NCBI RefSeq assembly: GCF_006345805.1
Contig: NC_042998.1
Coordinates: 182,466,001 to 182,530,000, forward strand
Direction: 5' to 3'
Length of the DNA: 64,000 nt
DNA from: Octopus sinensis
Taxonomy: Eukaryota
Part shown: positions 1 through 61,912 of the stretch, one piece after another
Layout: the number at the start of each line of letters is the position of its first letter
Numbering within the stretch: position 1 is the first letter of the stretch
Program-made: the position numbers and the translations under genes
Notes under the pieces: model-generated
Seen by the model: only the letters and a program-made list of their open reading frames with translations
What the model was told of the DNA's origin: nothing
The model's database searches: none

Positions 1-174
1 TATGTATGTATGTATGTATGTATGTATGTATGTATGTATGTATGTATGTATGTATGTATGTATGTATGTATGTATATGTACGTGTGTGTGTGTATGTATG
101 TATGTGTGTATGTATGTTTGTATGTATGTATGTATGTATGCATGTATGTACGTGTGTGTGTGTGTGTATGTATG

Positions 175-208
<34 letters not shown>

Positions 209-330
209 TGCATGTATGTGTTTGTGCATGTATGTATGTGTATGTGTGTATGTATGTATGCATGCATGTATGTATGTATGTATGTATGTATGTGTGTGTA
301 TGTATGTATGTATGCATGTATGTATGTATG

Positions 331-364
<34 letters not shown>

Positions 365-405
365 TGTATGTATGTATGTATGTATGTGTGTATGTATGTA
401 TGTAT
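1..405. repeat. (TATG)n/(TG)n microsatellite
   Basis: Near-pure TATG tetranucleotide repeat; explains the MYVC ORFs. Confidence 0.98.
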
Positions 406-739
406 GTTCAATTAGCTTACTATGAAAATGTAAGGGTATCGCGAAAGACCTGGTTGAAGGCTCAACCTTCCGAGTTCTTTCGCAGGGCTTAGAAAAACTG
501 AAGGACCGCTGCAATAATTGTGTGAACCCGTGAGGGCGATGTATTCAATAAAATCACAATTAACTGATCCTCCTGTATTTTCTTTTATCCAAACCCAGGG
601 ACTTTTTAGCACATCCTCATCTGTGTGTGTGTGTGTGTGTACATACGTACATACATACATACATACATACATACATACGTACATACATACATACATACAT
701 ACAGACAGACAGACAGACACGAATTTTAGGTTAGTTAAC

Positions 740-7834: not shown

Positions 7835-8232
7835 GGCGCAGGAGTGGCTATATGGTAAGTAGCTTGTTTACGAACCACATGGTTCCAGGTTCAGTCCCAC
7901 TGCATGGCACCTTGGTCAAGTGTCTTTTACTATAGCCTCGGGCCGACCAAAGCCTTGTGAGTGGATTTAGTAGACGGAAACTGAAAGAAGCCCGTCGTAT
8001 ATATGTATATGTATATATGCCTGTGTGTGTGTTTGTGTCTGTTTGTCCCCCCCAACATTGCTTGACAACCGATGCTGGTGTGTTCATGTCCCCGTAACTT
8101 AGCGGTTCGGTAAAATAGACCGATAGAATAAGTACTAGGCTTACAAAGAATAAGACTTGGGGTCGATTTGCTCGATTAAAGGCGGTGCTCCAGCATGGCC
8201 GCAGTCAGATGACTGAAACAAGTAAAAGAGAG
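7835..8232 (+). mobile_element. tRNA-derived SINE, family B
   Basis: GGCGCAGGAGTGGCT..GGTTCAGTCCCACTGC head, internal (TA/TG)n and GAAACAAGTAAAAGAG tail; other copies at 33745, 38336 and partial copies. Confidence 0.85.
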
Positions 8233-8509
8233 AGCAAAAGAGTATACAGGGGTTATACACTAACGACTAAAACAAGTCCTTCCTCCCTAGAATGCATTCC
8301 TTCTAAAATTGTCTCTCTACTCGTATGTTTACAGCAGTCTCTGACTTGCAACATTTTAAAGGAAAGATTAGCTGTGTCAAACTGAATAATCTTGGAGTAC
8401 CTGCAAAAGCTATAGGTTCTGCCCCTCTCTCAGATCTAGCAAAATAAATAAATAAATAAAATTAACATACATTTATATTATTTGTTTCAGGCAATAATCA
8501 ATATACACA

Positions 8510-8555
8510 ATGCAGTCTATACATTTTATGCTGCTTCTTCTTATCACATTTTCAG
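8510..8555 (+). CDS. Small secretory-pathway protein, coding exon 1 (signal peptide MQSIHFMLLLLITFS)
   Basis: Acceptor tttgtttcag ends at 8490; in-frame TAA upstream of the ATG at 8510; consensus donor CAG|GTAAGT at 8556; ends in phase 1. Confidence 0.75.
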
Positions 8556-8839
8556 GTAAGTATATTTCTCTGAATTAATGATTCATATTAATAAGCTAAT
8601 TGCTGAAGAGGTGCTGACAAAGCTAAAGTAAGCAGAGAGAAGCCAATTGGCACAGATTGACCTTGAACTCTGTTGCACATGCACACTAAGTTATAACATT
8701 CTTGTTCACCTCTGCTGTTTATAGCAGTGCTTGGAAGTAAGGTGTGAAGAGTGTAGTCACTTCAAAAAGAAAATCGGGTTTCAGATGAGCAGGATCTCCT
8801 TGATTATGTTAAAAAGGGTAATAAGAGGTGACAAATTGT

Positions 8840-9010
8840 AGGTCTATGGCTAATGCCCGAAACCAAGGCTTGAAAGGAACAAGATTTCAAGAAGCTGAGG
8901 AAATCCAAGAAAATGTTACAAGGCAGCTTGCTTGCTATCCCAAAAATGGAGTTCTGGAAATGCTTCCATCAATGGAAACAAAGCTGGTATGGCTTCAAAA
9001 GGGAACTACT
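8840..9010 (+). mobile_element. Degenerate mariner transposase C-terminal remnant
   Basis: LKGTRFQEAEEIQENVTRQL then (frameshift) EFWKCFHQWK matches the mariner C-terminal pattern. Confidence 0.55.
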
Positions 9011-9058
9011 AAATGCCAAGTTGATGTGTGGTGTAGGTTTTTTTTTTTGTAGCACCTA

Positions 9059-9060
9059 TA

Positions 9061-9092
<32 letters not shown>

Positions 9093-9123
9093 TATAATAA
9101 TAATAATGATAATAATAATAATG

Positions 9124-9169
<46 letters not shown>

Positions 9170-9183
9170 TAATAATAATAATG

Positions 9184-9226
<43 letters not shown>

Positions 9227-9585
9227 AATTATTGTATACAGTGCTCAGGTGCACCACAACTTGTCAAAAGTGCGCATAAAGCATATGCAGTAATGTATAA
9301 ATGTCTGGAAAGCGAACAGTGTATGAGTCAGATACATGCCTGTGTGTATATGGAGGGAAGAAAATCAGGTGTAGTGTTGGTGAATCTCAGGAAGCATGGA
9401 AGTTTTGAAGGATGCAGTGCTCCGACAACTAACAATTGATACCAGCAGTTTGTTCCATGCTTCAGCAACTCTTAGCGGGAAAAACATGTTTCCGAAAGTC
9501 ATGGGAGCTGTGCTGTTTTCTGACTTTGTAAACATGTCCACAAGTGTTAGACAGGTGGAATTTGAAAAGGTGCTCAGTTATTGTT
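9059..9585 (-). mobile_element. CR1-type LINE 3' end with long (ATT)n tail
   Basis: Minus strand reads RKHVFPLRVAEAWNKL; the (AAT)n tract at 9059-9225 is its tail. Same family at 12560-12990 (-) and 24545-24785 (+). Confidence 0.7.
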
Positions 9586-9763
9586 ACCTGTCCTAATACT
9601 TTTTGCTCAGACCTCATAGGTGTGTGTGTGTGTGTGCGTGTGTGTTTTGAGTGTAAGTCAGTAAAACCATTATATAGGTAAATACAGACTTGTGAAATTT
9701 AAACAAAAGTGAAGAATATACATTAATTTCTTGTTTTGAGAAAAAAATCTTTTGTTTTTACAG

Positions 9764-9984
9764 TATTTTGCAATGGTTTGAAAAAGGAGAAGGCCAAGAA
9801 AAAAGGAAAACAACTCAATGACGACCCACTTAAATTAATTTTGGATCAAAATAACTGGAAGGAACTAGCTTCAAAATTTATTTCGGACGTTGCCTCTAAC
9901 ATAGATATGAACAAGGTAATGAAGATGGTAAAGAATTTCAATGTAACATCCTTTCTGAAGGACTTGCAGAAAAAAGAGTTATAA
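9764..9984 (+). CDS. Small secretory-pathway protein, coding exon 2 (Lys-rich, helical, ends KKEL)
   Basis: Acceptor tcttttgtttttacag; phase 1 matches exon 1 (G+TA=Val); open to TAA at 9982-9984; AATAAA at ~10055, ~10080 and ~10195. Confidence 0.75.
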
Positions 9985-10434
9985 TTTTAAATGACGTAAT
10001 GATAAAATGATATTCTTAAGGTTGTAGGTCTAACAAAAGAACTTTTGTAAGACTGAATAAATCTAGAAGTATTTTTGTAATAAATGCACCATGTATATGA
10101 TAATGTGATATGTCATTAATATATTTCAACATTATTCCTTTATGTCACACTTTGGACACTGTTTATAATTTAATCTGTGTACTAGTCTATGGTTAATAAA
10201 CCAGCAGGTCTGTGTGGTTAAGAAGTTCGCTTCCAAACCATATGGTTTTGGGTTCTACGTGGAACCTTGCTAGTGTCTTCTGGTATAACTCTGGATTAAC
10301 CAAATAACAGTGAAATCTGTGTCAAATTACAACCCACTGTTTAGACTACTGTGGATAATATAATTCCAGATAGGTAAAAAAGTGTAAAGAGCCCCCCTTA
10401 GGTTACGAATGACCAATGGATTGCACCTAGAAAA

Positions 10435-11184: not shown

Positions 11185-11520
11185 TCCGAATGTGGCCGAT
11201 GCCAGCGCCGTCTTGCACGTAAAATGCACCATCCAAACGTGGCCGATGCCAATGCCGCCTTGACTGGCTTCCGTGCCGGTAGCACGTAAAAAGCACCAAC
11301 CGATCGTGGCCATTGCCAGCCTCGCCTGGCACCTGTGCCGGTGGCACGTAAAAAGCACCCACTACACTCACGGAGTGGTTGGTATTAGGAAGGGCATCCA
11401 GCTGTAGAAACACTGCCAGATCAGACTGGAGACTGGTGCAGCCTCCTGGCTTCCCAGACACCGGTCGAACCGTCCAACTCATGCTAGCATGGAAAACGGA
11501 CGTTAAACAACGATGATGAT
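11185..11520 (+). mobile_element. RTE-tail-derived repeat, family C
   Basis: Internal GGCACGTAAAAAGCACC repeats, GGAAGGGCATCCAGC motif and (GAT)n tail; copies at 12286-12540, 17010-17285, 34650-34903, 41278-41560 and 45822-45905. Confidence 0.7.
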
Positions 11521-12273
11521 TGCGTTAATGTTGTCTTTTCCTAACTGCATTAAGTATTTTTAATTTTTGTCCAACCCATGCCTGTTTGGAAAACAAATGT
11601 TAAATGATGATGATGATGAGATGGTGGTGGTGGTGGTGGCGATATATTTGATGTTCACTGGATTAAATATTAACTATTGCTTTTCATGTTGATGGCATCT
11701 CTAACCTCAAACATATTTTCAAGAATGTGAGAGCCCACCTGGCTGCAGTCAACAGAAGAAATCTAGTTTTTAATATCAGTGGGGATTGTCGTTGTAATTT
11801 TCATTAGACTGCTATCTACACAAGATCTCACTGAAACATTTATGTACCCATTGGTTGTATTGACTATTTGTCCACATGGTTCCCTCTACAAGGGTCCATC
11901 TTAATCAAGCAACTTCAAAACCATGGTTATAGTTAGTGCAGGCATGTGCAACCTGCTGCACTTGAGCTGAATGCAGTCCTTTATGACTTTCTGCATAGCA
12001 CACATAATGTCCAAGGGTAAGTCAAAGGTTGATACAGCTTGGCACCTGATTTGGCCACTGATTTCTACAGCTGAGTGAACTGGAGTAACATGAGATAAAG
12101 TGCCTTGCTCAAAAATACAACACACAATGCAGTCCAGGAATCAATCTCACTACCTTATGATTGTGAGGTCAACACTCTAACCACTGAGCCATGCACCTTA
12201 ACTCATCAAAAAAAGTAGCCAAAAGTGCACAAACTGTACATTGTGTAATGCATAGGAAGAGAACTATGAATGA

Positions 12274-12306
<33 letters not shown>

Positions 12307-13564
12307 TTAACGTCCGTTTTCCATGCTAGCATGGGTTGGACGGTTCAACTGGGGTCTGGGAAGCCAGAAGGCTGCACCAGGCCCAGTCTGATCTGGCAAT
12401 GTTTCTACAGCTGGATGCCCTTCCTAACGCCAGCCACTCCATGAGTGTAGTGAGTGCTTTTTACGTGCCACCGGCACAGGTGCCAGACGGGGCTGGCAAC
12501 GGCCACGGTCGGTTGGTGCTTTTTACGTGCCTCCGGCACAGAGTTGTTTAAGAAAAGAAGAAGCAGGTAGGCATCAGGTGTACTGGTGGTGAATTTCAAG
12601 AAGCATGGAAGTTTTGAAGGATGTAATGTCCTGACAGTTAACAACTGATGTGGCTAATTTATTCCATACTTCAGCAATTCTGAGCATGAAGAGATGAGTG
12701 CTGAAAGTCATGGGTGCTGTGTTGTTTTTTGATTTTGTAAGCATGTCCACGAGTGTTAGACATGGAATTCAAGAAGGTGCTCGAAGTTGTTGTTGGAAAG
12801 ATTTTGGATAATCTAGTGAGTGCCTACCAAGTCAGTTGCCAGATGTTGGCGAGTAAATGTGTCCATGCCTCGGAAAACAAAGCATTCAGCATATAGCAGA
12901 TGCCTGACAGTGGGTATTTGTTTGGTTGCATATTTCTGAACAGGTTCCTGGGGATTGATAAGCTGAGCTAGATAGGGTGATACACACTCTACATGTAAAT
13001 GTACTATAGCCTATGCAGCTTTAAAAAAATAGCTTAAAAGGTCTTCATGAGTAATGCTAAGAAACCCTTAATTTTCTTGACAATTTTAGAGATGTGGTTT
13101 GTCCAAAGCAAATTGTTGTTGACAATAATGCCCAAGTTATGTTGACTAGTAGACTCCTTAAGACTGGTGTTGTTGATATTTACATAATGTTAAAGATTAG
13201 CAGGAAAAAAATGTCTATGGTGAGAAATCTGCAGTTTCTCATTACAGACTATAGCTTCAGGTTTCTATTTACAATAACTGAAAATGTTGTTTACATGAGT
13301 AACAGACTCAGTACCAATCTATGAAGTTGGGTTTCACAAAACTTGAAAGAAAAATGCCAGATCAAATGATTACATTTACAGGTTATTCAAGGCACTGTCA
13401 AAGATATGCAGAAGATACAAGAAGTTTAGCATGTAATATGATTCACTTATGCAATTGCATCCATGCTTGCATCTTGCATGTATGTGCATGTTTGCATGTT
13501 AAATGTGTAAACATGAATACATGTGAGCATGTATGTATTTGAACATTAATACATGTGTGCAAGC

Positions 13565-13716
13565 AAGCATGCATGCATACATACATACACACATACATAC
13601 ACACATGCATACATACATACATACATACATACATACATACATACATACGTGCACACACACACACACATACATACATACATACATACATACATACATACAT
13701 ACATACATACATACAT

Positions 13717-13755
<39 letters not shown>

Positions 13756-13770
13756 AACACAAACACACAG
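13565..13770. repeat. (CATA)n/(CA)n microsatellite
   Basis: Direct inspection. Confidence 0.95.
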
Positions 13771-14420
13771 AATGCATTGAATCAGTCTTCCAATAAGTCT
13801 TTGCAATTTGTTGTCTACTTAGTGTATGATTACATAAAATGTTGCACAAAATTCCAGTATCCCATACTAAAATAAAGCAAAAAAGAAATTGTCCTGAATT
13901 TTGTTATGAAAAATATTTAATAATTTTTATCTACTATATTTGACACATATTTAGAAAACATATTATGTACTTTATATATATTTTATAAAACAATATCTGG
14001 CATTTACACTGTCTCTTCAGTGCGTCCACTAAGTACCATCCAAAATATATAATTGCTAAGTCATGAAGAACACAAGATTGATTGATGTATCTTCGTTATA
14101 TCTGGCCGAGATGAGTGGCAATGTATGATTTTTCACATAATATTTGAGTAGATTCTTAATTCACATCAGTTGTTCTTCAGTGGAGACAATCAGAGCTGCA
14201 ATAAGAGAAAATTATTGTAAATTATTGCTATTGTAAATATTTTACTGTAATAAAAATAAATAACTAAATCACAGGTGCAGGCATGGCTGTGTGGTACAAA
14301 ACTTGCTTCTCAACCACATGATTCCAAGTTCAGTCCCACTGTGCAGCACTATTCTGCTATAGCTTCGGGCCGACCAAAGCCTTGTGAGTAGATTTGGTTG
14401 ACAGAAACTGAAAGACGCAA

Positions 14421-16574: not shown

Positions 16575-17646
16575 CTGTAAATAATAAGAGCACACATTAT
16601 TTATAATAAAGTTAAGCAGAACAAACTTATCAAAATCATACTTCCAATTTTTCTTAAACTACTTTGGTATATTATTTGCATATCCACGAAGATGTAATTT
16701 GGAGGAATAGTGTATGTTGGGAAAAACTGTGCTACAAGTTGGTAGTAGATAGTATATGAAGTAGTGTCAAGCTAGTGAAAAATCTGGTGCAGTGAAGTGG
16801 TTCAACTAGAACTTAGCTGGTATTTCATAAATAAGAAAACCAACGGTAAAAATCTATCTAAAAGGAGCTTGGAAATCAGACATTAAATTGATAGGAGGAG
16901 GTGGAGTAATGATGATGATGGTGATGACGATGATGATGATGACAATGATATACATTTTTGAATTTTTATGCATTTATTGGACTCTGTAAATTCAATAAAA
17001 CACGCCACCTTACGTGTGCAGGTGGCATGTAAAAAAAACCACTTGAGTGTGGCCGTTGCCAGTACTGCCTGACTGGCCCTTGTGCCGGTGGCACATAAAA
17101 GCACCCACTACACTCTCGGAGTGGTTGACATTAGGAAGGGCATCCAGCTGTAGAAACTCTGCCAGATCAGATTGGAGCCTGGTGTAGCCATCTAGTTCGC
17201 CAGTCCTCAGTCAAATTGTTCAACCCATGCTAGCATGGAAAGCGGGCGTTAAATGATGATGATGAAGATGATGATGATGATGATGTTTAGTAATGTGCTA
17301 GTACTAACATTAACAATAATAATTCTTTCTGCTACAGACACAAGGCTTGAAATTTGGGGAGAGGGGTCAAGTTGATTACATTGATCCAGTGGTCAACTGC
17401 TATTTATGTTATTAATGCCGAAAGGTTGAAAAGCCAAGTCAACCTTGGAGGAATTTGAACTCAGAATGTTGAGCTAGAAAAAAATGTTGTTGAGCATTTT
17501 GTCCAGCATGCTAACGATTCTGCCAGTTCACCACCTTAATAAGGATGATAATAATAATAAAAACAATAACATAACAATTAATAATAATTACTATTGGTGG
17601 AAGGTAGAATCAGTAGAGTAATCAACTAAATGGTTTGTTGTATTCA

Positions 17647-24872: not shown

Positions 24873-24993
24873 CTGAAGCAACCAGATTATTTTACTTTGC
24901 CATTGTGAACTACTTCTCCACATTGATAGTTTTCGGAAATTGTAAAAGGATCTTGAAATCTTTGTATAGAGATTTTTACAGAGATGAATGAAG
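24873..24993 (-). CDS. Minus-strand gene exon (S-FIHLCKNLYTKISRSFYNFRKLSMWRSSSQWQSKIIWLLQ)
   Basis: AG acceptor, CAG|GTAAGA donor, 121 nt, phase 2 to 0; the only fully open frame matches both neighbours. Confidence 0.75.
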
Positions 24994-25599
24994 CTGATTG
25001 TAAATAAGAATAAATGCAATAATACCTCAAAAATGCAAACTCTCAGGTGTCATATTTATTTATTTATGTATGTATGTATGTATGTATGTATGTATGTATG
25101 TATGTATGTATGTATGTATGTATGTATGTATGTATGTATGTATGTATGTATTTATGTATGTATGTATTATGTATGTATGTGTATGTGTGTGTGTATGTAT
25201 GTATGTATGTCTGTATGTATGTGTGTGTGTGTATGTATGTATGTGTGTGTGTATGTATGTATGTATGTATGTATAAAGGTAGAATTTTATGCCATCCTGT
25301 TGATGAACCCATCACTTTAAATCTTGCACTTCTAATAATCCTTTATTACATATAAACTCTTCATTATAAGGTCTGAGTGATTATGGAACTTTCTATCCAT
25401 TATTGTATTTCCAATGATACACTAACTGCTAATTGTTGTATTAGCCATACCAATGGTCACATACAACCACTCATATTCTCCTACATTGAAAGAACTTCAC
25501 AATTAACAGCAATGTGAAAAATAAAGAAAACAAGTGATAAATTATTTTAAAAAATTTAAATAATTTTTCATGCTAATGAAGTTAAAGAATGAAATGTAC

Positions 25600-25833: not shown

Positions 25834-26064
25834 TATTTCTTTATTACCCTCAAGGGGCTAAACACAGAGGGGACAAACAAGGACAGGCATAGGTATTAAA
25901 TCGATTACATCGACCCCAGTGCGTAACTGGTACTTAATTTATCGACCCCGAAAGGCTGGAAGGCAAAGTCGACCTCGGCAGAATTTGAACTCAGAACGTA
26001 GCGGCAGACGAAATACGGCTACGCATTTCGCCAGGTGTGCTAATGTGTCTTCCAGCTCGCCGCC
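25834..26064 (-). mobile_element. SINE family A
   Basis: Reverse-complement copy. Confidence 0.85.
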
Positions 26065-26504
26065 TTTTACTTGCATGGAAATATAGGGAGAAAGTTAGGG
26101 AGTGTCAATGTTCTGAGGATGAAGAATTGGGTTTGATGCATAGTGCAGGGATGTAAAACAAAATGTGGTAGACTGGGGGGAAGATGAGAAAAGGGAGCTT
26201 AGAGTGACTGAGACTAGCCTAGCCAGCTTGCAGGGAGCAGTGACCGGATGGAATTATATGGAAAAGAGGATAAAACAGAAAGTTATTCAATGGGTTCTTA
26301 ACTTCATTTGGATATGTTTTGTTTGAATTTATAGCAATAGACTATTTTGATTGGTTGAAATTCTCTGGTTAACTTCAATCTCTTATCTCTTGTTGCATGT
26401 TAGTGAAATAGTGAAGAAATATTAAGAGAAGGAGAATAAGGAAATGGATAAATTGGGAACACAAAGGGATAACCACTGTTTATTAAAAGTATGCACAGAA
26501 TGGT

Positions 26505-27260
26505 CTAAGAATTGAAGAGGGAGCTGCGGAGGGAGAGAGGGAAGAGAAGAGAGAGAGAGGAAAGAGAAAGAGAGGGGAGTAAGAGAGCGAGAGAGAGGTA
26601 AGAGAAAAAGAGAGAGGGGGAAAGTGGGAGGGTGAGAGAGAAGACGGGAGACTGAGAGAGAAAGAGAGAGAGGGAGAGAGAGAGAGAAAGAAGGGGAGAG
26701 AAAGAAAGAGAGGGGAGAGGAAGAGAGAGAGGGAGAGATAAAGAAGGAGAGAGAAAGAGAGGAGAGAAAGAAAGAGAGGGGAGAGGAAGAGAGAGGCAGA
26801 GAAAGAGGGAGAGAGAAAGAGAGAGAGGGGAGAGAAAGAGATAGAGGGAGAGAGAAAAATAAAGGAGAGAGAAAGAGAGAGGGGAGAGAGAAAGAGAGCG
26901 GGAAGAGAGAAAGAGAAAGTGAGGGAGAGAGAAAGAGAGTGAGAGGAAGGGGAGAGAAAGAAAGAGAGAAGAGAGATGGGGGAGAGATAAAGAGAGAGAA
27001 AGAGGAAGAGAGTGGGGAGAAAGAAAGAGAGGGAGAGAGAAAGAGTGGAAGAGAGAAAGAGTGGAAGAGAGAGAGAAAGAAATGGGATGTGAGAGGGGGA
27101 GGGAGAGGTATGTGGGAGGAGAGGGAGGGAGATGTGGGAAGGGGGAAGAGGTGGTGAGTGAAATGTGTAATTTCATTGAAGAGTGAAAAAAAGGTGAGAA
27201 AAAAAGAGAGTAAGGCAAAGAGTGAGGCAAAGAGAGTAAGGCAAAGGGGGAGAGTGCTGA
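26505..27260. repeat. ~750-bp polypurine (AG/GA-rich) tract
   Basis: Almost exclusively A/G on the plus strand; explains the Ser/Leu-rich ORF. Confidence 0.95.
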
Positions 27261-27850
27261 GTATTAAATATAAAATTATGCATAAAGTATATAAAGCAAA
27301 TATATATAAAGTGCATTATGTAATCATCATATTCCAATTTCCTTCATTTTTTAATGATTAGCAGATGAGTGACTATCTTTTGATACAGACAGAACACAGG
27401 TTATGTTTTCGGGTTTTTTGGATTAAGTTTTCAGAAATAATCTTACAAGTTTACCATTAATTTTGTGAAATATTCACGGGTCCCACTAGTTATTATAAAT
27501 ATACTTATTTTTGGTACGTGTAAACATCATAGAATGGTGGAAAACTCCTATTTTCACTTCTCAGTAGAAGCTATTTCATTGCATAAATCGGACAAGAACA
27601 TATCTATTACATGCACCAGGCCTGAAATTTGGGGGGAAAAGAATAGTCAATTGTATTGGTACCAATACTTGACCAGTACTCTGTTTTATTATCTTTAAGA
27701 AGTTGAAAGGCACTGTTGACCTTATTGAGATTCAAACCTGAAACAAACAGCCAGAAAAAATACTGTAAGGCATTTTCTCCAACATTCTAAGAATTTTGTC
27801 ATTCCATCTCTCAGCAAATTAAATAAACAAGGATCTCAAATTTTGGCACA

Positions 27851-28096
27851 AACTAGCAATTTTAGAGAGAGGGGTTTAGTCAATTACATAGACCCCTGTG
27901 CTGAACTGATACTTATTTTATCAACCCTGAAAGGACAAAAGGCAAAGACTACCTTGGTGGAATTCAAAGTCAGAACTAGCAATTTTAGAGAGAGGGGTTT
28001 AGTCAATTACATAGACCCCTGTGCTGAACTGATACTTATTTTATCAACCCTGAAAGGACAAAAGGCAAAGACCACCTTGGTGGAATTCAAAGTCAG
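27851..28096 (-). repeat. Tandem duplication (2 x 123 bp) of a degenerate SINE A segment
   Basis: 27851-27973 and 27974-28096 are nearly identical. Confidence 0.85.
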
Positions 28097-31491: not shown

Positions 31492-32306
31492 TTCGTAGAC
31501 ATAGAGAAAGCCTTTGACAGGGTCCCCCCCCCCCCCGATCTGGTGGTCAATGAGGAAACTAGGGGTAGATGAATGGTTAGTGAGAGCTGTGCAAGCCATG
31601 TACAGGGACACTGTAAGTAAGGTAAGGGTTGGCAACGAGTGCATTGAAGAATTCAAGGTAGAGGTTAGGGTCCACCAGGGTTCAGTCCTCAGCCCCCTCC
31701 TATTTATCATAGTCCTCCAGGCAATACCAGAGGAATTCAAGACAGGATGCCCCTGGGAGCTCCTCTATGCTGATGACCTTGCTCTAATTGCTGAGTCATT
31801 ATCAGAACTAGAGGAGAAGTTTCAAGTGTGGAAACAAGGATTAGAATCGAAGGGCCTTAAAATTAACCTAGCTAAAACCAAAGTCCTAATAAGTAGGAAG
31901 GCAGGCAAACCACAAATCCCTTCAGGTAGATGGCCCTGCTTGATCTGTAGTAGAGGCATAGGTAGAAACTCTATAAGATGTACCCAGTGTAAGCTATGGA
32001 CACATAAAAGATGCAGTAATATCAAAGGAAGGCTAACTGGGAAGATAGATTTTGTATGTGGCAGATGCTTGGGAGCGATAAACACTGAAAATGCGCAGAG
32101 ACCAACTTCCGCCAAATTCCAGGGAGAAAAACTAGAAATTGTTGATAGCTTCCGTTACCTAGGTGACCAAGTCAGTAGTGGGGGCGGGTGTGCTGAAAGT
32201 GTAGCTGCTAGAATAAGAATAGCTTGGGCAAAGCTCGGAGAGCTCTTACCTCTGCTGGTGACAAAGGGCCTCTCGCTCAGAGTAAAAGGTAGACTGTATG
32301 ATGCAG
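31491..32306 (+). mobile_element. RTE-clade LINE fragment (RT domain plus PHD-like finger)
   Basis: DIEKAFDRVP, HQGSVLSPLLF and LLYADDL RT motifs; CxxC..CxxC..HxxC..CxxC at ~31935-32070; truncated at both ends. Confidence 0.92.
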
Positions 32307-33224
32307 GTATTACAATATCATAATCACCATCATTTAGCATCCATGTTCTATGCTGATATGGGTTGGATGGTTTTACAGGAGCTGGTAATCCTGGGGACTG
32401 CACCAAGTTCCATTACCTGCTTAGGCATGTTTTTTATAGCTTGATACCATTTCTAGCACCAACCACTTTACAGAACAGACTGGATGCTTTTTACATGGCA
32501 CCAGCACTGGTGTCACGTAAAAAGCACCCATGTAAAAAGCATTCCTCTCAGAAGTTGTATTGAAGGAGGTGGCTTTGTGCCAGGTGATGAGAAGTTAAGA
32601 TTTAGAGGGACAAAAACAGGCATCTTGCTGTAGAAGAGATAAATGGCTATTCCAGTAAGAGGGAGAGAAAGAACGGGAGAGAGAGAGGGAGAGTGAGAGA
32701 AAGTGACAGTAACAGGGAGCAAGAGTAAGAGAGTGTGAGAGAAAAAGAGATAGTTGTGATGAAGTACCAGGGAATATGTACTCATATATTCGGACCTTAC
32801 TTCTATCCCCACTCTCAAAATATGTTATCCTGTTTCTCCATTTTCTTGCATCTTTATTATTCATCTAATTATCTTCTCTGCTGCTAATTTTTACTCTCAC
32901 CTTGTTTTACAATTTCAGAAATATCATTGATTATCTCTCCTCTTTGACCCCTGTCCAATGTGTTACCTCTGCACCTTATTCAATAAACTAATGAGTAAAA
33001 TTAAAAACTAAACTCATCAGCATTACCAAAGTCAAACAAAAGAATGAGTGCCTATGTTCGGCAAAAAAGTGAGACATAATCTTTATTGATTGAAATCAAG
33101 TTCAGCCAAGAACTGATCCCACCACTTCAAATACTCTTCTGTCTCAGCAATATCCTGGATAATTCCCAACTTAGATGTGATAATTGACTCATAAGAAATG
33201 ATTGGATTGCAACAGTGCCCATAC

Positions 33225-33744: not shown

Positions 33745-33913
33745 GGCGCAGGACTGGCTGTGTGGTAAGTAGCTTGCTTACCAACCACATGGTTCCGGGT
33801 TCAGTCCCACTGCGTGGCACTTTGGGCAAGTGTCTTCTACTATAGCCTCGGGCCGACCAAAGCCTTGTGAATGGATTTGGTAGACGGAAACTGAAAGAAG
33901 CCTGTCATGTATA

Positions 33914-34477: not shown

Positions 34478-36208
34478 CTGAAAAAAAAAAAGAAAAAAAA
34501 ATGGAATTTAGCATATGTAATACAATTTAACCAAGTCATGTTTTTAAAATGGATTCTGCTTTTCACAGACAACTGTTATAAGGATTCTCTAAATTATTTG
34601 GTCACAATCTTTTGGTCTTAGTAAGTCTTGATTTTATTTATTAAATTTGTGTGGCACGTAAAAAGCACCATCCGTTCGTGGCCGTTGCCAGCCTCGCCTG
34701 GCCCCCATGCCAGTGGCACGTAAAAAGCACCCACTACACTCATGGAGTGGTTGGCGTTAGGAAGGGCATCCAGCCGTAGAAACATTGCCAGATCAAACTG
34801 GGCCTGGTGCAGCCTTCTGGCTTCCCAGACCCCAGTTGAACCGTCCAACCCATGCTAGCATGGAAAGCGGATGCTAAACGATGATGATGATGATGATGAT
34901 GATAAGTAGTATGTTTGTATATGTACATATTTTCCTTTTACATATACCTTGTAATGACGATGCATTAGGATTTGTGAGTTTAATATTACTCCAAAGAGAA
35001 TATTACATCACAGAGAAGGGAAAGAGACTTAACATGATAAAGGAAGTGATTATTATCTATAACTGCTTCCAATCACAATTGTGATATTTGTAGTGAGAGT
35101 GTTGGGTCAGTAGTTGACTGGGTCAGAGAAGTTATTTTTGTGAAGAGGATTACATTGCTGTGTGTTTCCATAAGTTTGACATGGATCTTCACAGAGAACT
35201 AGATGAGGAGGGTAATGGAAGATTCCTTTGTTGGGCTGAAATGATTGATGGAGTTCCAAACCTATATGTTATCAACATAAACTGTAATGTACCACAGGTT
35301 TATAAAATACAAAATAATAATTATCATAGTCTTAAGAATTTAGTGGTTTTATCAGAATGCTGAAAAGATGATGTTTACATTGCATAGACAGAAGAAAGAA
35401 TGCAGAATACAAGTAGTAGGGATTATTTATTCATTTGAAGCAGATGACTCATTCTATCACTATTCCATGTTTAGTATGGATGTAATGAGTATCCTATTAG
35501 TAATTAAAAAATGTCTTTTAATGAGTATTTGTTCATATGTTTATATATGGACAGAATTTTGAGTTTAAAAGTCTGTACAGCTGAGAAACATTATTCTATA
35601 AGAATAAGGTAAAAGTAAAATACACTTCCTTGCAAAACACAACAGTTGAAATATCACTCTATAACCAAATATATAGAGATCGCAACAGTTACTAGAATGC
35701 AACTATAACAACATCAGGACATGTCACATTATTAGCAAATACCTTACAAGGACTCTACAGCACAGAATTAAAATCATAGATTGTACCAAAATGAAATGTA
35801 CAGAACTGTTAGAAAAAAATATTTAAGTGTACAAATACATAGCACACCCAATCTGTCAAATCTAAATAAAATAAAATTTCCCTCCCTATCTCAATCCTTC
35901 TTGAATCAAAGTGTGGTGTGTTGTTGGTGTGTTTTAGAGTAGGCAAAACAAGGGGTCATGGGAATGATGTTGTAACTGATAAGATTATCCTCACTTAACA
36001 TTGTTTAACAGTTAACTTCTGATTACTTTGAAAGTCTACTTCACATGTACTTCTTTGTGTTGATCTTTGGGTTGTATGCTATTAATATGAATGAATGAAT
36101 GAATGAATGAATGAATGTATGGATGGATGGATGGATGCATGCATGTGTGTGACTGTTCCTTTTGCAATCTATTGAAACCAAAAAGAATACATCCACAATA
36201 AAAATTAC

Positions 36209-38593: not shown

Positions 38594-38760
38594 TAGGACG
38601 GGCTTCTTTTCAGTTTCCGTCTACCAAATCCACTCACAAGGCTTTGGTCGGCCCGAGGCTATAGTAGAAGACACTTGCCCATGGTGCCACGCAGTGGGAC
38701 TGAACCCGGAACCATGTGGTTCGTAAGCAAGCTACTTACCACACAGCCACTCCTGTGCCT
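38336..38760 (-). mobile_element. SINE family B
   Basis: Full-length reverse copy. Confidence 0.85.
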
Positions 38761-42340: not shown

Positions 42341-45300
42341 TCACACATCACACCAGTGGAAGGAACCCACTTTACAATAGTGGCGATGAGGAAAAAAATA
42401 ATTTAAGTGAAGTGAAAAAAAACATTCACATTGAGAGTTTAAAGTAATTCATGTGGAAAATTAAATAACTCGACAAAAAAGAAACAAAAATCTTGTGCAA
42501 ACTTATGAAAATCATAAAATATGGAAGACCTGTTAGCTGGGGAAGTTGAGTTGCAAACACTGCAGCAACAACAAGAACAACAAGGATTGCAGCCGCAAAT
42601 GTTAAAAGTAATGAAATTGATAACCAAACTGGAGAATACAGTTTTGCCTGACCCTGTAGCAAACTCCATAAGTGAATTCAAATACGACCCCAAAGAAGGA
42701 GTAACCTTTGAGCTTACTTTCGAATATTTGAACAAATTTTTGAAAAAGAATGTCAGGATTGACATATAATATAAATGGCGGTGCCCCAGCATGGCCACAG
42801 CTCATTAGCTGAAACTGGAAAAATCAAATCAAAATCAAAATCAAAATCATTGGACAGACAAAATTAAAATGTATTTAGTTTTAAGAAAACTAGTGACAGC
42901 AGAGCATAAGAAGTATAGTAATTTCATATTGCTAAAAAAAGCATCTGACATAAATTTCACTGACACAGTTGACATTTTGTGCAAAATGTTTAGTGAAAAG
43001 AGCTTACTAAATAGAAAAGAACAAAGATGAAGACTTCACTACTAACACAGGCAGAATAAAAAAAGAATGTAAGAAATTTAGTTGGAATTTACCAAAAAAA
43101 AAACAACAAAAGACAAAGACAGGTGTGTAAACAACAAACGTGTATTAGTTTAATGCTCAGGAAGGTGAGATAGTCTTTTACATTTTGAGCCTACACTCCT
43201 CAACAGAAAGAAACATGGGAAAATAAACAGAGAGAGAGAATAAAAAAGCTTTAGTGGCTAGTGGTCAATCATGGCGATGCTTACTCCAGATTCTTTCAAG
43301 TGTTCGATTTTTGCACAAAGATTGACAGATAAAAGGGATGCAGAAATCCAAGCGAAAATTCTAGCAAAACTGAAAATGAACCAGGATTTGATATTGTTGA
43401 AACTGTCAGAAGAGTTGACATGATATTAAAATTAAGGTATGACACAGAAGAAATTTAATTGAAAGAGTGTTTTCACATAAGACCAGTGCAAAATACTTGG
43501 AAGACAAAGTGTTTCAAGAAAAACAGAAAAAATATTGGGATGTAGACCCATGTATGGGATGCACCTGAAAAAAGATTGCCCATACAAAGAAGCAAAGTGT
43601 TTTCACTGCAGGTTTACAGGACATGTAAAATTGCACTGCAAAACTAGAATGATAGGAAATGGAACAAACAACAAAAAATAAACAGTTTGTAAGCAGGAAA
43701 CGTTGCGATTACAACAAACAGAAAATTTGTGAATGAGAGAATTGAAACCACTAGTGTCAGAATGCAATTAGACATGGGAAGTGACATCACAATCATAAAT
43801 GAGGAAACATGGGAACAGGTGGGTAAACCAAAATTATGTATTTCAAACAAAATAATGTATATAATATGAAAGAAAATTATATTTCGTGGGTGAACACATT
43901 TGTAATATAATGTTCAAAGGTCAAACCAAAAAAGTGAATGTTTATATGTTGAAAAAAAATCCATGAATTTATTCGGCACTGAAAGTATAGAGAAATTTAA
44001 TTTATGGGATATGCCCATAAATGCTTTGTACAATAACATAAATGGAGCAGTCAAACGAGGTTTATGAACTGAAACAAAAAAAAGAAAACATTATGTGGAA
44101 CATTGTGCGTAAACTACCAGTAACTTTGGAAGAAATAAAAAGTAATGTGAGAAATGGAAAATTTATTAATGAAGCCAAAAGAAAACTGCAATTAACAAAA
44201 GGAAATAAAGAAAGGTCTGATGCAAGGAACTTCCAAGATGTGAGCATGTATTCTAAATGTGATGGTGTACTAATGTATGGTCAGAGGGTAGTCATACCAC
44301 AGACATTACAGAAGAGAATGCTAAGAGTCCCATGTGGGACACCCAGGCATCTCTAGAATGAAAGCGCTGATGTGAAGTTTCATATACTAGCCAAGTATTG
44401 ACAAGGAAGTTGAAAACCCAGTAAAAGGCTGCAGAGGATGTGTGCTGGCAGTGAAACTACCAACTACAAAATATGAACCTTGGCTGGAAGTGAAAATACC
44501 ATGATTGCATATTGATTTTGCATATTGATTTTGCAGGCTCAGTAAATGGATATTATTATTTAATAGTAGTGAACAGGTACACAAAATGACCTGAGGTTGC
44601 GAGGTGTACATGACCAACCTCATATATGGTAGTAAACTTTTTACACGAGCTGTATGCAAGATTTGGTGTACTGGATATAATTGTCTCTGATAACAGAACA
44701 CAGTTTGTATACTGTGAGTTTAAAAGATTCTGCAAGATGTTCATGTTAGAACATAAAACTATAGCACTGCATTACCCTAGATAGAATGAAAAGGCAGATC
44801 GATTCATGGACACTTTTAAGAGAGCTTTAAAGAAAGCTAATAAGGAAGCCATGGATGAGGTCATAATCCAACAATTCTTAAGGGTATACAGGGTGACTCC
44901 AAACCCAAATGCACCAGAAGGAAGTTCACCAGCAGACTTAATGTTTGCCAGAAAGATGAAGTTAGTATTTGATAAGCTGTTACCAGTGATGAAAAAAACA
45001 TGTGCAAGTAAAGACATGCCAAAATTCTTTAGAATCGGTGATAAGATATATGTAAAAATATACAAAAATAGCAAGCAATACTGGAAAAAAGGAGAAATTG
45101 TAACAGGAAGAATGATGTATGGTGTAAGAAGAAGAAATGGAATGGAAAGGAGACAGAGAAATCAGCTTAAGGAAAGATTCATACAAAAGGAACCAACAAG
45201 AGTAGAAATACTGATGGATTGGCTATATGGCACTTTTCAGGTTCCGACACTGTTACAGGAAGTAGAAAACACACATACAAGGAAAAGGAAGAATAGAGAA

Positions 45301-45716
45301 TTCTTAAAAGTAGACTTTAAGAAGAAATGATATTGAGTATATAAAAAAGGAGGAGGTGGGGTGAATAAAAGAAATTGATTGTTAAATAAAATAATTAAAA
45401 AGTGAGATTCTATATAGTGAAACTGTATACCACTTCCCAATAAAAAAGTGGTAGGAGGCAGCCATTATAAATAGACCGGTAGCCACTTGTCAAGAGAGGG
45501 TCAAGAGCTGAAGAGTTGAAAGTCGACAGTTTTAGTCAGTGTCTTGTGGAGTTATCATTAATAGTAAGGCAGAAGAAGTTAGTGTATTACTATTCCGGTA
45601 TGAAGAGATACAACAGTATCCGATGACTGGTAACTATTGTGGCTACTAGTATACAACAGCAACTACAACACAACGACAGTCACACATCTCACCAGTGGGA
45701 GGAACCCACTTTACAA
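42341..45716 (+). mobile_element. Gypsy LTR retrotransposon, decayed, RT/RNase H deleted
   Basis: 5' LTR remnant 42341-42377 matches 45680-45716. PBS TGGCGATGAGG at 42381. Gag SISEFKYDPKEGVTF, CCHC knuckles ~43550-43640, protease LDMGSDITII, integrase HPG/HIDFA/IVSDN..QF. PPT 45343-45361 and 3' LTR 45362-45716. Confidence 0.9.
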
Positions 45717-48410: not shown

Positions 48411-48536
48411 ATAGTGTTTTTGTTATCTACATTCCTACAATGAGACTTTGTATTTTTGTTAGAAACCTGTTCCTTTTTCAGATGAAGATTTCATATACTT
48501 AAAAATAGAACATACATACATACATACATACATACA

Positions 48537-48569
<33 letters not shown>

Positions 48570-48728
48570 TCATATATATATATATACATACATACACGCA
48601 CATATATACGCACATATATACATACATAAACACACACATACATATACATACATTCATATGTAAGATACATGTATGTATGTATACAAAATCTCTTCCTCCA
48701 ACCAAGTCAATGTGTTTAATATAGTTAC

Positions 48729-48776
48729 CCTGGGAGGAGTGACTGCGAGGTAGTCGGAATATTTTGTCTTTCGTTG
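48729..48776 (-). CDS. Minus-strand gene micro-exon (QRKTKYSDYLAVTPPR)
   Basis: Strong acceptor tttcttttttcttatag, G|GTAACT donor, 48 nt; frame chosen to fit the phase-0 chain (the phase-1 frame is also open). Confidence 0.6.
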
Positions 48777-59200: not shown

Positions 59201-60202
59201 TTTAATTCATGCCACCCAAGACACACTAAAACAAACATCCCCTTCAACCTTGCAAGAAGGATATGCACAATAGTGTCAGAACAAAATACCAGGAACTTTA
59301 GACTGCAAGAACTCAAAAACACCCTAATTGACAGACATTACCCAGCTCAACTCATAGAGGATGGGATCAGACGTGCAACAGAAATCAACATAGAAACTTT
59401 AAGAAAAGTTCAACACAACAACACACCTTCCCCGAAAATACTACCTTACATATCTACATACAACCCCAGAAACAAAGAAGCCTTCACCATCATCACCAGA
59501 GATTTACCAATACTTCATAAAAACCCAAAATTAAAGGAAATTCTAAACATACACCAAATCATTAAAAGCTACAAACAGCCTAAATCACTTAAAAAGATTC
59601 TCACAAAGGCAAAATTGTCTTCTAAAATTACGGATGCAAAAGTAAAAAAATGTGGTAGATCGAACTGTGCAACATGTCCTAACCTATTGGAAGGATCAGA
59701 ATTCTTCTTTAAAGAGGGACAGAAATTTAAGATCAAATCTAACTTTACTTGTGCCTCTGAAAACATAATTTATGTATTAAATGCTCGGGCTGCCACCAAG
59801 ACTACGTGGGTTCCATGGGACTATCACTCAGGCGCAGATGCACACTGCATCGACAACAGATTGCATTCCCAGAATATAGAATGATACCTTTTAGTGAGCA
59901 CATTGAGAAATGCGCAAAGCAACTACTGCCACAATTTTTAATCTTCCCATTTTACCAATGTGCTTTCGGATCATCAACACAAATGAGACTGAACAAGGAA
60001 ACATTCTTCATTGAAAAGTACAAACCCAGACTCAACCATCCGAACATACTGACACAGAGAAATTAACAAGGAAAAGGGAAAAAAAAATTTTTAAGCGATT
60101 ATCTCCCCTACACCGGAAAAAATCACTCACTACCTCCCCTTATTTAGAAATCTCCTGGAAATAAAAACAACGATAATTCCATGCAATAAAACATAACGTC
60201 AC

Positions 60203-61743: not shown

Positions 61744-61775
<32 letters not shown>

Positions 61776-61858
61776 TATACTTATACAAATATAGATGCAT
61801 GTGTACTAAAGAAGATATTTGCTTCCTAAACCGAGGTCAACATGTCCAAAGTAATTAC

Positions 61859-61912
61859 CATTTCAAATTCTGTTGACTCATGTTTGCTAGATCTAGGTAG
61901 TGGGCCCATTGG
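61859..61912 (-). CDS. 54-nt repeat exon (PMGPLPRSSKHESTEFEM)
   Basis: ttttacag acceptor, GAAATG|GTAATT donor, phase 0 to 0, intact. Confidence 0.7.

What the first reader, a model, noticed from the sequence alone, without database searches (positions are those of the whole stretch)
8510..9984. Unrecognised 88-aa signal-peptide microprotein, cationic and helical, ending in KKEL
Seen: two exons with consensus splice sites and matching phase give MQSIHFMLLLLITFSVFCNG-LKKEKAKKKGKQLNDDPLKLILDQNNWKELASKFISDVASNIDMNKVMKMVKNFNVTSFLKDLQKKEL. The mature part has 16 Lys and 9 acidic residues (about +7), no Cys, an N-V-T sequon and apparent amphipathic periodicity. The ORF track misses the signal exon. 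Inference: either a secreted cationic peptide (antimicrobial or gland product) or an ER-retained microprotein with a KDEL-like xxEL end. I recognise no family.
Basis: partly seen in the sequence, partly recalled or inferred. Interest (0 to 1): 0.7.

Follow-up and report, generated by a model that had tools for sequence, protein, structure and literature searches.

The report
Conserved octopod signal-peptide microprotein gene
This is a real, evolutionarily conserved two-exon gene for an 88-residue protein found so far only in octopods; it enters the secretory pathway and most likely stays in the endoplasmic reticulum, and it belongs to no described family, but it is not a surprising kind of gene.

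Summary

It is a real gene. A full HMMER pass over 1.84 billion proteins found one relative, an 87-aa hypothetical protein of the octopod Argonauta hians (E 9e-16, about 60% identity). That gene has the same 46-nt first exon, intron phase, start, stop, NxT sequon, KKEL end and AATAAA. Only the exons align between the loci. dN/dS is 0.22 (synonymous versus non-synonymous, p = 2e-6), and only this frame is open in both species.

No Pfam family, solved structure or fold matches.

The cationic, amphipathic reading is weak:
- The charge lies in an unconserved, predicted-disordered Lys-rich linker.
- The conserved roughly 50-aa helical domain is nearly neutral.
- Its hydrophobic moment is no better than shuffled sequence.

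KKEL fails the PROSITE KDEL pattern. It fits the experimentally widened K-x-E-L rule and is also a literal KKXX motif.

Most likely this is an ER-resident microprotein that is luminal after signal cleavage (0.45). Rivals are a secreted basic peptide (0.27) and a membrane-anchored form with a cytosolic KKXX tail (0.13). It is an orphan gene of moderate interest.

The parts
8477..8509 (+). Conserved 5' flank or leader. It holds TTTCAG|G (AG at 8489-8490), an in-frame TAA at 8495-8497 and A at -3 of the ATG. It is either a 3' splice site of an unseen non-coding leader exon or core-promoter/5'UTR sequence. A TATA-like TTTATAT lies at about 8472-8478.
   Evidence: The blastn match to the Argonauta locus starts at 8477. 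The alignment shows the conserved TT(T/C)CAGG(C/G)AATAAT block and an in-frame stop upstream of the ATG in both species.
8510..8555 (+). Exon 1 (coding part): ATG, codons 1-15 (MQSIHFMLLLLITFS) and the first base of codon 16. The donor is CAG|GTAAGT.
   Evidence: The Argonauta exon 1 is also 46 nt, with donor CAG|GTAAGC.
8556..9763 (+). Phase-1 intron of 1208 nt, GT..AG, holding an (AAT)55 microsatellite at 9061-9224. The Argonauta intron is at the same position and phase but is 365 nt and cannot be aligned.
9764..9984 (+). Exon 2 (coding part): the last two bases of codon 16 through codon 88, plus the TAA stop. It is preceded by the polypyrimidine tract ttttgtttttacag.
   Evidence: It is 70% identical over 241 nt to the Argonauta exon 2. 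It is the only frame open in both species.
9778..9822 (+). Lys-rich linker, residues 21-35 (LKKEKAKKKGKQLND), net +5. It is poorly conserved (Argonauta LKK-RTPKSSKQATE, +3) and predicted disordered.
   Evidence: pLDDT is below 50 for residues 24-35 of the full-length model, and the first 16 residues of the mature model have no secondary structure. dN/dS for residues 21-45 is 0.48.
9823..9981 (+). Conserved helical domain, residues 36-88, net charge +2. The predicted helices are about 37-42, 44-61, 64-72 and 76-86.
   Evidence: The AlphaFold model of the mature protein has pLDDT 76-87 over this part. For residues 46-88, pN is 0.18 with synonymous sites saturated. The invariant blocks are KVMK.V.NFN.TSFLKDL.KKEL.
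9940..9948 (+). N-x-T sequon (N75-V-T; N-L-T in Argonauta), 14 residues from the C-terminus.
   Evidence: Sequons in the last 50-55 residues are glycosylated post-translocationally by STT3B, with a preference for NXT (PMC3613688). Occupancy was not tested here.
9970..9981 (+). C-terminal KKEL, invariant in the orthologue. It is both KDEL-like (K-x-E-L) and a literal di-lysine KKXX motif.
9985..10084 (+). 3' UTR up to the conserved polyadenylation signal AATAAA (10079-10084).
   Evidence: The alignment shows GAAG(T/C)ATTTTT..AATAAAT.CA conserved about 95-100 nt after the stop in both species.

Best explanation
This is a genuine single-copy, two-exon protein-coding gene. It has so far been seen only in octopods: this window and Argonauta hians. 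It encodes an 88-aa precursor of a secretory-pathway microprotein.

Proposed mechanism, with shown and inferred steps marked:
1. Residues 1-20 form a signal sequence: a short n-region, the h-region FMLLLLITFSVF, and a c-region C/S-N-G that obeys the -3/-1 rule. The features are shown; the signal function is inferred.
2. The precursor is under 100 aa, so it probably enters the ER post-translationally by the Sec62/63 route used by small pre-proteins. This is inferred from PMC3395660.
3. Cleavage after Gly20 would release a 68-aa, roughly 7.9-kDa, Cys-free protein. It has a disordered Lys-rich N-terminal tail (residues 21-35) and a conserved, near-neutral helical domain of about 50 residues (36-88). 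The helical domain is predicted and the conservation is shown.
4. The invariant C-terminal K-K-E-L would be read by the KDEL receptor in the Golgi, returning the protein to the ER and making it an ER-luminal resident. This is inferred.
5. N75-x-T may carry an STT3B-type glycan. This is inferred.

Its job in the ER is unknown. My best guess is a small accessory or adaptor protein whose helical domain binds a partner and whose basic tail contacts the acidic luminal proteins or lipid head groups.
For: The gene is real:
- An orthologue exists with identical anatomy.
- Conservation between the loci is confined to the exons.
- dN/dS is 0.225 overall and 0.154 for the mature part, and identity by codon position is 69/86/58%.
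- Fisher p = 1.8e-6 for synonymous versus non-synonymous change, and this is the only frame open in both species.
- Both species have an upstream in-frame stop, A at -3 and AATAAA.
- The Argonauta model came from an independent ab initio + RNA-seq + homology pipeline (PMC12682272).

The N-terminus looks like a signal sequence:
- There is one hydrophobic segment only, at the N-terminus. The 13-residue Kyte-Doolittle mean there is 2.4-2.7, against at most 1.1 anywhere else.
- Both species share a -3/-1 cleavage candidate after G20.

The tail could work as an ER retrieval signal:
- KKEL is invariant.
- All AKXEL reporters except X = Pro gave ER localisation in HeLa cells (PMC2140024).

Domain picture: AlphaFold pLDDT is 76-87 over residues 41-88 with a disordered basic tail. 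The charge is concentrated in the unconserved tail.
Against: - There are no transcript or splice-junction data for the window species.
- Only two sequences exist, so the conservation of KKEL and of the sequon cannot be separated from the generally conserved last 22 residues.
- KKEL does not match PROSITE PS00014, because K at -3 is not D/E/N/Q. The paper's text gives no efficiency figure for AKKEL, and I found no natural KKEL-tailed ER resident.
- From my own knowledge, known soluble ER residents are mostly acidic, whereas this protein has pI about 9.6-9.8.
- The flanking charges (C-flank +4/+3 against N-flank 0/+1) go against the usual orientation of a cleaved signal peptide.
- No signal-peptide predictor was available.
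Confidence: 0.45

Rival explanations
1. It is a secreted basic peptide, either a host-defence or antimicrobial peptide or a gland, skin or reproductive-tract product. The signal peptide is cleaved, KKEL is not an effective retrieval signal or is trimmed at the Lys-Lys pair, and the 7-8 kDa Lys-rich protein acts outside the cell. It could act on microbial membranes, or on polyanions through its basic tail.
For: - It is small and Cys-free, with a signal sequence and net charge +7/+4.
- It is helical.
- It is lineage-restricted and fairly fast-evolving, at about 60% identity, as many secreted effectors are.
- KKEL lies outside the PROSITE pattern.
- From memory and untested: secreted heparin-binding factors such as midkine and pleiotrophin also start with a Lys-rich tail right after the signal peptide.
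Against: - The charge is neither conserved in position nor in amount, and it lies in a disordered linker. The part under selection is nearly neutral (+2/+1).
- The hydrophobic moment is not above shuffles.
- dN/dS of 0.15-0.22 shows purifying selection, with no sign of diversifying selection.
- The invariant K-x-E-L end would, by the reporter data, hold a soluble protein in the ER.
- There is no acidic propiece and no conserved internal processing site.
Confidence: 0.27
2. It is a single-pass ER membrane microprotein. The N-terminal segment is not cleaved and acts as a reverse signal-anchor (N-terminus in the lumen, C-terminus in the cytosol). The Lys cluster is then the juxtamembrane positive-inside determinant. 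The helical domain faces the cytosol, and the C-terminal KKEL is a canonical di-lysine KKXX signal bound by COPI for Golgi-to-ER retrieval.
For: - K at -4 and -3 from the free C-terminus is the literal KKXX motif that COPI recognises on membrane proteins (PMC3521961, PMC2120234).
- The span without charged residues is 21 aa in the window and 19 aa in Argonauta. Its 19-residue Kyte-Doolittle mean is 1.87/1.76, above the usual 1.6 rule of thumb.
- The C-flank is +4/+3 against an N-flank of 0/+1. By the charge-difference and positive-inside rules (established knowledge: Hartmann, Rapoport and Lodish 1989; von Heijne), that puts the C-terminal side in the cytosol.
- AlphaFold draws residues 2-22 as one helix.
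Against: - The strongly hydrophobic core is only 12-14 residues. It is followed by a polar, helix-breaking S/C-N-G with a good -3/-1 cleavage site in both species, which is the anatomy of a cleaved signal peptide.
- From my own knowledge, the conserved N-x-T sequon would have no use in the cytosol.
- The KKXX proteins described are mostly type I, with a separate C-terminal transmembrane segment, and none is present here.
Confidence: 0.13
3. It is a prohormone or neuropeptide precursor, cut at its Lys-Lys sites into small bioactive peptides.
For: It has a signal sequence, is short and contains several KK/KKK runs.
Against: - The basic runs in the linker are not conserved (KKEKAKKKGK versus KK-RTPKSSK).
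- The conserved block 36-84 has no internal dibasic pair.
- There is no conserved Gly-dibasic amidation site.
- The only conserved pairs are at 22-23 and 85-86, and cutting there would merely trim the ends.
- The conserved part is predicted to be a folded helical domain.
Confidence: 0.05
4. It is not a gene: a chance ORF with chance splice sites in AT-rich, repeat-rich DNA.
For: ORFs of this length are common in the window, which has 93 stop-to-stop ORFs of 85 or more codons. No transcript evidence is available here for the window species.
Against: - An orthologue has the same start, exon length, intron phase, stop and poly(A) signal.
- Conservation between the loci is restricted to the exons.
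- dN/dS is 0.22, with p = 1.8e-6 for synonymous versus non-synonymous change.
- All other frames are closed.

Confidence: 0.02

Closest known systems
GAB1604872.1, hypothetical protein Ahia01_000768700 of Argonauta hians (P0001)
   Same: It is the only detectable relative (E 9e-16 for exon 2 alone, 6.6e-44 for the profile; about 60% identity over the full length). It shares the 46-nt first exon, the phase-1 intron, the signal sequence core MLLLLITFS, the block KVMK.V.NFN.TSFLKDL.KKEL, the NxT sequon and the AATAAA.
   Different: It is 87 aa rather than 88. Its linker is less basic (net +4 versus +7 for the mature protein) and its intron is 365 nt rather than 1208 nt. It is uncharacterised, so it gives no functional information.
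Soluble ER residents with non-PROSITE KDEL variants (for example ERp27 KVEL, AGR2 KTEL, MSRB3 KAEL; Raykhel et al. 2007, PMC2140024)
   Same: They have a signal sequence plus a C-terminal K-x-E-L with a non-acidic residue at -3. In reporter assays such tails keep soluble proteins in the ER.
   Different: There is no sequence or fold similarity to any of them. This protein is much smaller, has no Cys and no thioredoxin or other known domain, and is basic. KKEL itself is not among the natural human examples listed in the text.
Di-lysine (KKXX/KXKXX) ER membrane proteins retrieved by COPI (for example yeast Wbp1; PMC2120234, PMC3521961)
   Same: The C-terminal four residues are literally K-K-x-x.
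   Different: Those proteins expose the tail to the cytosol behind a transmembrane segment. Here the only hydrophobic segment is N-terminal and looks like a cleavable signal.
Linear cationic alpha-helical host-defence peptides and small Lys-rich helical secreted proteins (cecropin-type peptides; apolipoprotein C-I as an analogy, from memory)
   Same: They share a signal peptide, small size, lack of Cys, Lys-richness and helical prediction.
   Different: The amphipathic moment is not above shuffles. The cationic part is disordered and unconserved, the conserved part is neutral, and the tail is of the ER-retrieval type. There is no sequence similarity.

Membership tests
KDEL-type luminal ER retrieval signal (PROSITE PS00014 ER_TARGET) | The C-terminal tetrapeptide matches [KRHQSA]-[DENQ]-E-L | tested here: not met
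   The tail is K-K-E-L, and K at -3 is outside [DENQ].
KDEL-type luminal ER retrieval signal (experimentally widened motif, Raykhel 2007) | K (or R/H/N/F/W/Y) at -4, any residue but Pro at -3, E at -2, L (or F) at -1 | tested here: met
   KKEL fits. The AKXEL series tolerated all residues except Pro (PMC2140024). The tail is invariant in the orthologue.
KDEL-type luminal ER retrieval signal | The protein is translocated and soluble in the lumen: a cleavable signal peptide and no other transmembrane segment | tested here: inconclusive
   There is a single N-terminal hydrophobic segment with a -3/-1 site after G20 and no second hydrophobic segment. The flank charges favour the opposite orientation, and no dedicated predictor or experiment was available.
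KDEL-type luminal ER retrieval signal | ER localisation that depends on the tail | not testable with these tools
   This needs tagged expression with and without KKEL.
Di-lysine KKXX COPI-retrieved ER membrane proteins | Lys at -3 and at -4 (or -5) from a free C-terminus | tested here: met
   K85-K86-E87-L88 in the window and KKEL in Argonauta. The motif definition comes from PMC3521961.
Di-lysine KKXX COPI-retrieved ER membrane proteins | A membrane-anchored protein whose C-terminus is cytosolic | tested here: inconclusive
   The uncharged span is 19-21 aa, its 19-residue Kyte-Doolittle mean is 1.76-1.87, and the C-flank is +3/+4. The hydrophobic core is only 12-14 aa and is followed by a signal-peptidase-type c-region.
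Linear cationic amphipathic alpha-helical antimicrobial peptides | Net positive charge of the mature peptide | tested here: met
   +7 in the window and +4 in Argonauta.
Linear cationic amphipathic alpha-helical antimicrobial peptides | A strongly amphipathic helix that carries the cationic residues | tested here: not met
   The maximum hydrophobic moment of 0.51 is reached by 17% of shuffles. Most of the charge lies in the disordered residues 21-35, outside the helices.
Linear cationic amphipathic alpha-helical antimicrobial peptides | Antimicrobial activity | not testable with these tools
   This needs a synthetic peptide and an assay on laboratory strains.
Neuropeptide or prohormone precursors | Conserved peptides bracketed by conserved dibasic cleavage sites (often with Gly for amidation) | tested here: not met
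   The linker basic runs are not conserved. There is no internal dibasic pair in the conserved block 36-84 and no conserved G-K-K or G-K-R.
Any Pfam-A family, solved structure or known fold | A significant profile, sequence or fold match | tested here: not met
   In Pfam the best E-values were 0.06-0.16, far below the cut-offs. The best PDB profile search hit was E 0.69. Foldseek against PDB gave no match with E below 7.

The most novel reading that the evidence does not exclude
This is the founding member of an octopod-restricted family of ER-resident microproteins. Its invariant KKEL tail would work as a retrieval signal in either topology, as KDEL-like in the lumen or as KKXX in the cytosol. 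It would then be a lineage-specific addition to the early secretory machinery of cephalopods. Alternatively, it is a new Cys-free class of cephalopod host-defence peptide.
Probability: 0.2. Interest if true: 0.5.

Novelty: new member of a known kind. Interest (0 to 1): 0.3.

Why it matters
It shows that a short two-exon gene that ORF-based tracks miss is genuine and under selection. That adds a conserved microprotein to octopod gene sets.

The only database relative is an unnamed hypothetical protein. I found no counterpart among the protein collections searched, which include Octopus bimaculoides RefSeq proteins.

If the ER-resident reading is right, it would be a rare natural example of a KKEL tail and a lineage-specific component of the cephalopod secretory pathway. 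If the secreted reading is right, it would be a new basic peptide family.

Either way it is one orphan among many in cephalopod genomes and touches no long-standing question.

Tried and rejected
- **Single-sequence word-index search:** it found nothing and even missed the Argonauta protein, although the two share nine exact 5-mers. I therefore treat absences from that tool as weak evidence.
- **Alignment search over 5.8 billion proteins:** it found only the Argonauta protein.
- **Exact look-up:** the window's 88-aa sequence is not in the collection.
- **JGI metagenome scan:** 600 pattern matches, none of them a relative.
- **Pfam on the full protein, the orthologue and the domain alone:** only sub-threshold noise (DUF4100, CTLH, RIIA.1-like).
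- **PDB profile search and two Foldseek PDB searches:** nothing.
- **Full-text search for six peptide fragments:** nothing.
- **Full-text search for 'KKEL' plus ER:** one irrelevant paper.
- **Paralogue search by tblastn in the window and in the 20.6-kb Argonauta locus:** the gene is single-copy in both.
- **Synteny by blastn and tblastx:** apart from the two exons, everything shared is SINE-like or retroelement sequence. The Argonauta neighbours are a proteasome AAA-ATPase more than 10 kb upstream and a 181-aa gene downstream. Neither could be found in the window.
- **Transposon idea for the intron:** I suspected that the ORF-like stretch at 8846-9025 was a mariner transposase remnant. Pfam gave no match, so I do not claim it.
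- **Amphipathic-helix idea:** rejected by the shuffle test.
- **Species of the window:** not identified. The retroelement search showed only molluscan relatives, the best of them unnamed.
Full report
**1. The observation**

- An ATG at 8510 opens a 46-nt exon (MQSIHFMLLLLITFS plus one base) that ends at a consensus donor, CAG|GTAAGT.
- After 1208 nt, a polypyrimidine tract and AG (ttttgtttttacag|T) open a 221-nt exon at 9764 that runs to TAA at 9982-9984.
- The mature part (residues 21-88) has 16 Lys, 9 acidic residues, net +7, pI 9.8 and no Cys. It has an N-V-T sequon at 9940-9948 and ends in KKEL.

One descriptive detail does not hold. The 'amphipathic periodicity' is no better than chance. 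The best 18-residue helical hydrophobic moment (0.51) is reached by 17% of shuffles.

**2. Is it more than chance?**

Taken alone, it is not. The window is AT-rich, repeat-rich eukaryotic DNA with 93 stop-to-stop ORFs of 85 or more codons.

The decisive evidence is comparative.
- A full HMMER pass with the exon-2 peptide over 1.84 billion representative proteins gave exactly one hit, an 87-aa protein (E 9.1e-16). [quoted passage not shown]
- Its locus (L001) has the same anatomy: a 46-nt first coding exon, donor CAG|GTAAGC, a phase-1 intron (365 nt), an acceptor tattttttatag|C, and a stop after KKEL.
- blastn of the 20.6-kb Argonauta locus against the window aligns, in order, only the two exons with short flanks (8477-8579 and 9748-9987). 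Everything else shared is dispersed repeats.
- The proteins are 60% identical.
- Nei-Gojobori counts give pS 0.59, pN 0.22 and dN/dS 0.225 (0.154 for the mature part). Identity by codon position is 69/86/58%.
- Synonymous against non-synonymous change gives Fisher p = 1.8e-6, and only this one of the six frames of exon 2 is open in both species.
- Both genes have an in-frame stop just upstream of the ATG, A at -3, and a conserved AATAAA about 95-100 nt after the stop.
- The Argonauta model came from a pipeline that combines ab initio, RNA-seq and homology evidence (PMC12682272).

I put the probability that this is a real protein-coding gene at about 0.95 or higher. The gene is single-copy in both loci.

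**3. Anatomy of the protein**

(a) Residues 1-20. This is the only hydrophobic segment. The 13-residue Kyte-Doolittle mean is 2.4-2.7 here, against at most 1.1 elsewhere. The core MLLLLITFS is invariant and is followed by polar S/C-N-G, with a -3/-1 cleavage candidate after G20 in both species.

(b) Residues 21-35. This is a Lys-rich stretch (LKKEKAKKKGKQLND, +5).
- It is poorly conserved (LKK-RTPKSSKQATE, +3).
- dN/dS for residues 21-45 is 0.48.
- AlphaFold leaves it without structure.

(c) Residues 36-88. This is the conserved part.
- For residues 46-88, pN is 0.18 with synonymous sites saturated.
- It is nearly neutral (+2/+1).
- It is predicted as four short helices with pLDDT 76-87 when the mature protein is modelled.
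- It ends in the almost invariant KVMK.V.NFN.TSFLKDL.KKEL.

**4. What it is not**

- No Pfam family matches.
- No solved structure matches by sequence.
- No fold match appears in PDB for either model.
- No further relative appears in 5.8 billion proteins, a collection that does contain Octopus bimaculoides RefSeq proteins.
- JGI metagenomes hold none either.
- None of the peptide fragments I searched for occurs in 8.4 million papers.

It is an orphan family with two known members.

**5. How it most likely works**

Entry into the secretory pathway is the best-supported step. At 88 aa the precursor ends translation with its signal barely out of the ribosome. It should therefore use the Sec62-dependent post-translational route shown for small pre-proteins (PMC3395660). 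That step is inferred.

The fate after entry depends on KKEL.
- KKEL fails the PROSITE pattern [KRHQSA]-[DENQ]-E-L.
- Raykhel et al. made every AKXEL reporter. They report that the -3 position accepts all residues but proline, and that natural K-x-E-L tails with non-acidic x (KVEL, KTEL, KAEL) mark ER proteins (PMC2140024).
- From rough residue frequencies (my estimate), a soluble secretory protein ends in K-x-E-L by chance about 4 times in 10,000.
- The tail is also invariant in the orthologue.

I therefore favour retrieval by the KDEL receptor and ER-luminal residence (0.45).

The conserved N-x-T lies 14 residues from the end. In the lumen it would be an STT3B-type site, and those sites prefer NXT (PMC3613688). 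Occupancy is unknown.

**6. Rivals**

(i) Secreted basic peptide (0.27). Size, charge, helicity, lineage restriction and the non-canonical tail favour it. The location of the charge, the failed amphipathicity test, purifying selection and the conserved tail count against it.

(ii) Membrane-anchored microprotein with a cytosolic tail (0.13).
- KKEL is also a literal di-lysine KKXX motif, the COPI signal of ER membrane proteins (PMC3521961, PMC2120234).
- The uncharged N-terminal span is 19-21 residues, with a 19-residue Kyte-Doolittle mean of 1.76-1.87.
- The flanks (C +3/+4, N 0/+1) would, by the positive-inside and charge-difference rules (established knowledge), put the C-terminal side in the cytosol.
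- Against it, the hydrophobic core is short and a signal-peptidase-type c-region follows it.
- This rival also ends in ER residence. 'ER-resident' (about 0.58 in total) is therefore more robust than either topology alone.

(iii) Prohormone (0.05). The dibasic sites are not conserved, and the conserved part looks like a folded domain.

(iv) Chance ORF (0.02). The comparative data in section 2 contradict it.

**7. Comparison with the known, and novelty**

The protein works like a soluble ER resident with a KDEL variant, or like a KKXX protein. It shares no sequence, domain or fold with any of them. It is also not a member of the amphipathic antimicrobial-peptide class, because that defining feature was tested and not met. 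The sequence family is new to the literature, though one member sits in GenBank as a hypothetical protein. The kind of gene, a lineage-restricted secretory-pathway microprotein, is familiar. I rate it 'new member of a known kind' with interest 0.3.

**8. Surroundings**

- The gene lies among SINE-like repeats, microsatellites and retroelements.
- There are no tRNA genes and no Rfam families in the window.
- I found no syntenic neighbour gene.
- A conserved TT(T/C)CAG|G block 20 nt upstream of the ATG may be the acceptor of an unseen non-coding first exon. The in-frame TAA at 8495-8497 means the coding sequence would not change.

**9. Limits**

- There are no transcript data.
- Only two sequences are available.
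- No signal-peptide or topology predictor was available.
- The species of the window was not identified. It is an octopod other than A. hians, judged from the orthologue and the shared repeats.

Noticed in passing
window 8477-8509 (and L001 9961-10000): A block TT(T/C)CAGG(C/G)AATAAT is conserved just upstream of the ATG in both species. It looks like a 3' splice site (AG at 8489-8490), which suggests an unannotated non-coding leader exon. Alternatively it is core promoter, with a TATA-like TTTATAT at about 8472-8478. An in-frame TAA at 8495-8497 keeps the CDS start unchanged.
   Followed up: partly
window 9061-9224: An (AAT)55 microsatellite (93% matches) lies inside the intron. The intron is 1208 nt here against 365 nt in Argonauta.
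   Followed up: yes
window 8846-9025: An ORF-like stretch in the intron reminded me of a mariner transposase C-terminus. Pfam gave no match, so this stays unconfirmed.
   Followed up: partly
window 7886-7997, 14358-14418, 33812-33902, 38597-38692; and 11362-11520, 12273-12440, 17108-17163, 34749-34903: Two families of short dispersed SINE-like repeats occur here. Copies of both are also in the Argonauta hians locus, at 69-93% identity.
   Followed up: partly
window 56817-59884: This is a Penelope-like retroelement (the RT ORF at 58547-59884, with relatives that carry a GIY-YIG domain). Several of its named relatives in the protein collection are filed as proteins of bivalve-symbiont MAGs (Candidatus Thiodiazotropha, Solemya velum gill symbiont). 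That probably reflects host DNA binned into those MAGs.
   Followed up: partly
window 31514-32323: A retroelement ORF carries a reverse-transcriptase domain and a PHD finger. It is 59% identical at the protein level to L001 20238-20627.
   Followed up: partly
window 42848-45330: A decayed retroelement (matches across 42848-45024, including an HKGHPG..CRGC-type integrase region) has in-frame stops. It is similar to L001 15936-19280.
   Followed up: no
window 26000-28000: This is a strongly strand-skewed low-complexity region (GC skew 0.52, AT skew 0.28). It produces a 241-aa Ser/Leu/Pro-rich pseudo-ORF on the minus strand.
   Followed up: no
window 1-500, 13443-13875, 24988-25355, 48499-48837, 50066-50428, 61553-61876: Repeated-tetranucleotide microsatellites generate long spurious ORFs, read as 'MYVC' or as 'HTYI' depending on frame and strand. 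They account for many of the window's longest ORFs.
   Followed up: no
tool behaviour: The single-sequence word-index search did not return the Argonauta protein, although it is in the collection and shares nine exact 5-residue words with the query. Negative results from that tool are therefore weak.
   Followed up: partly
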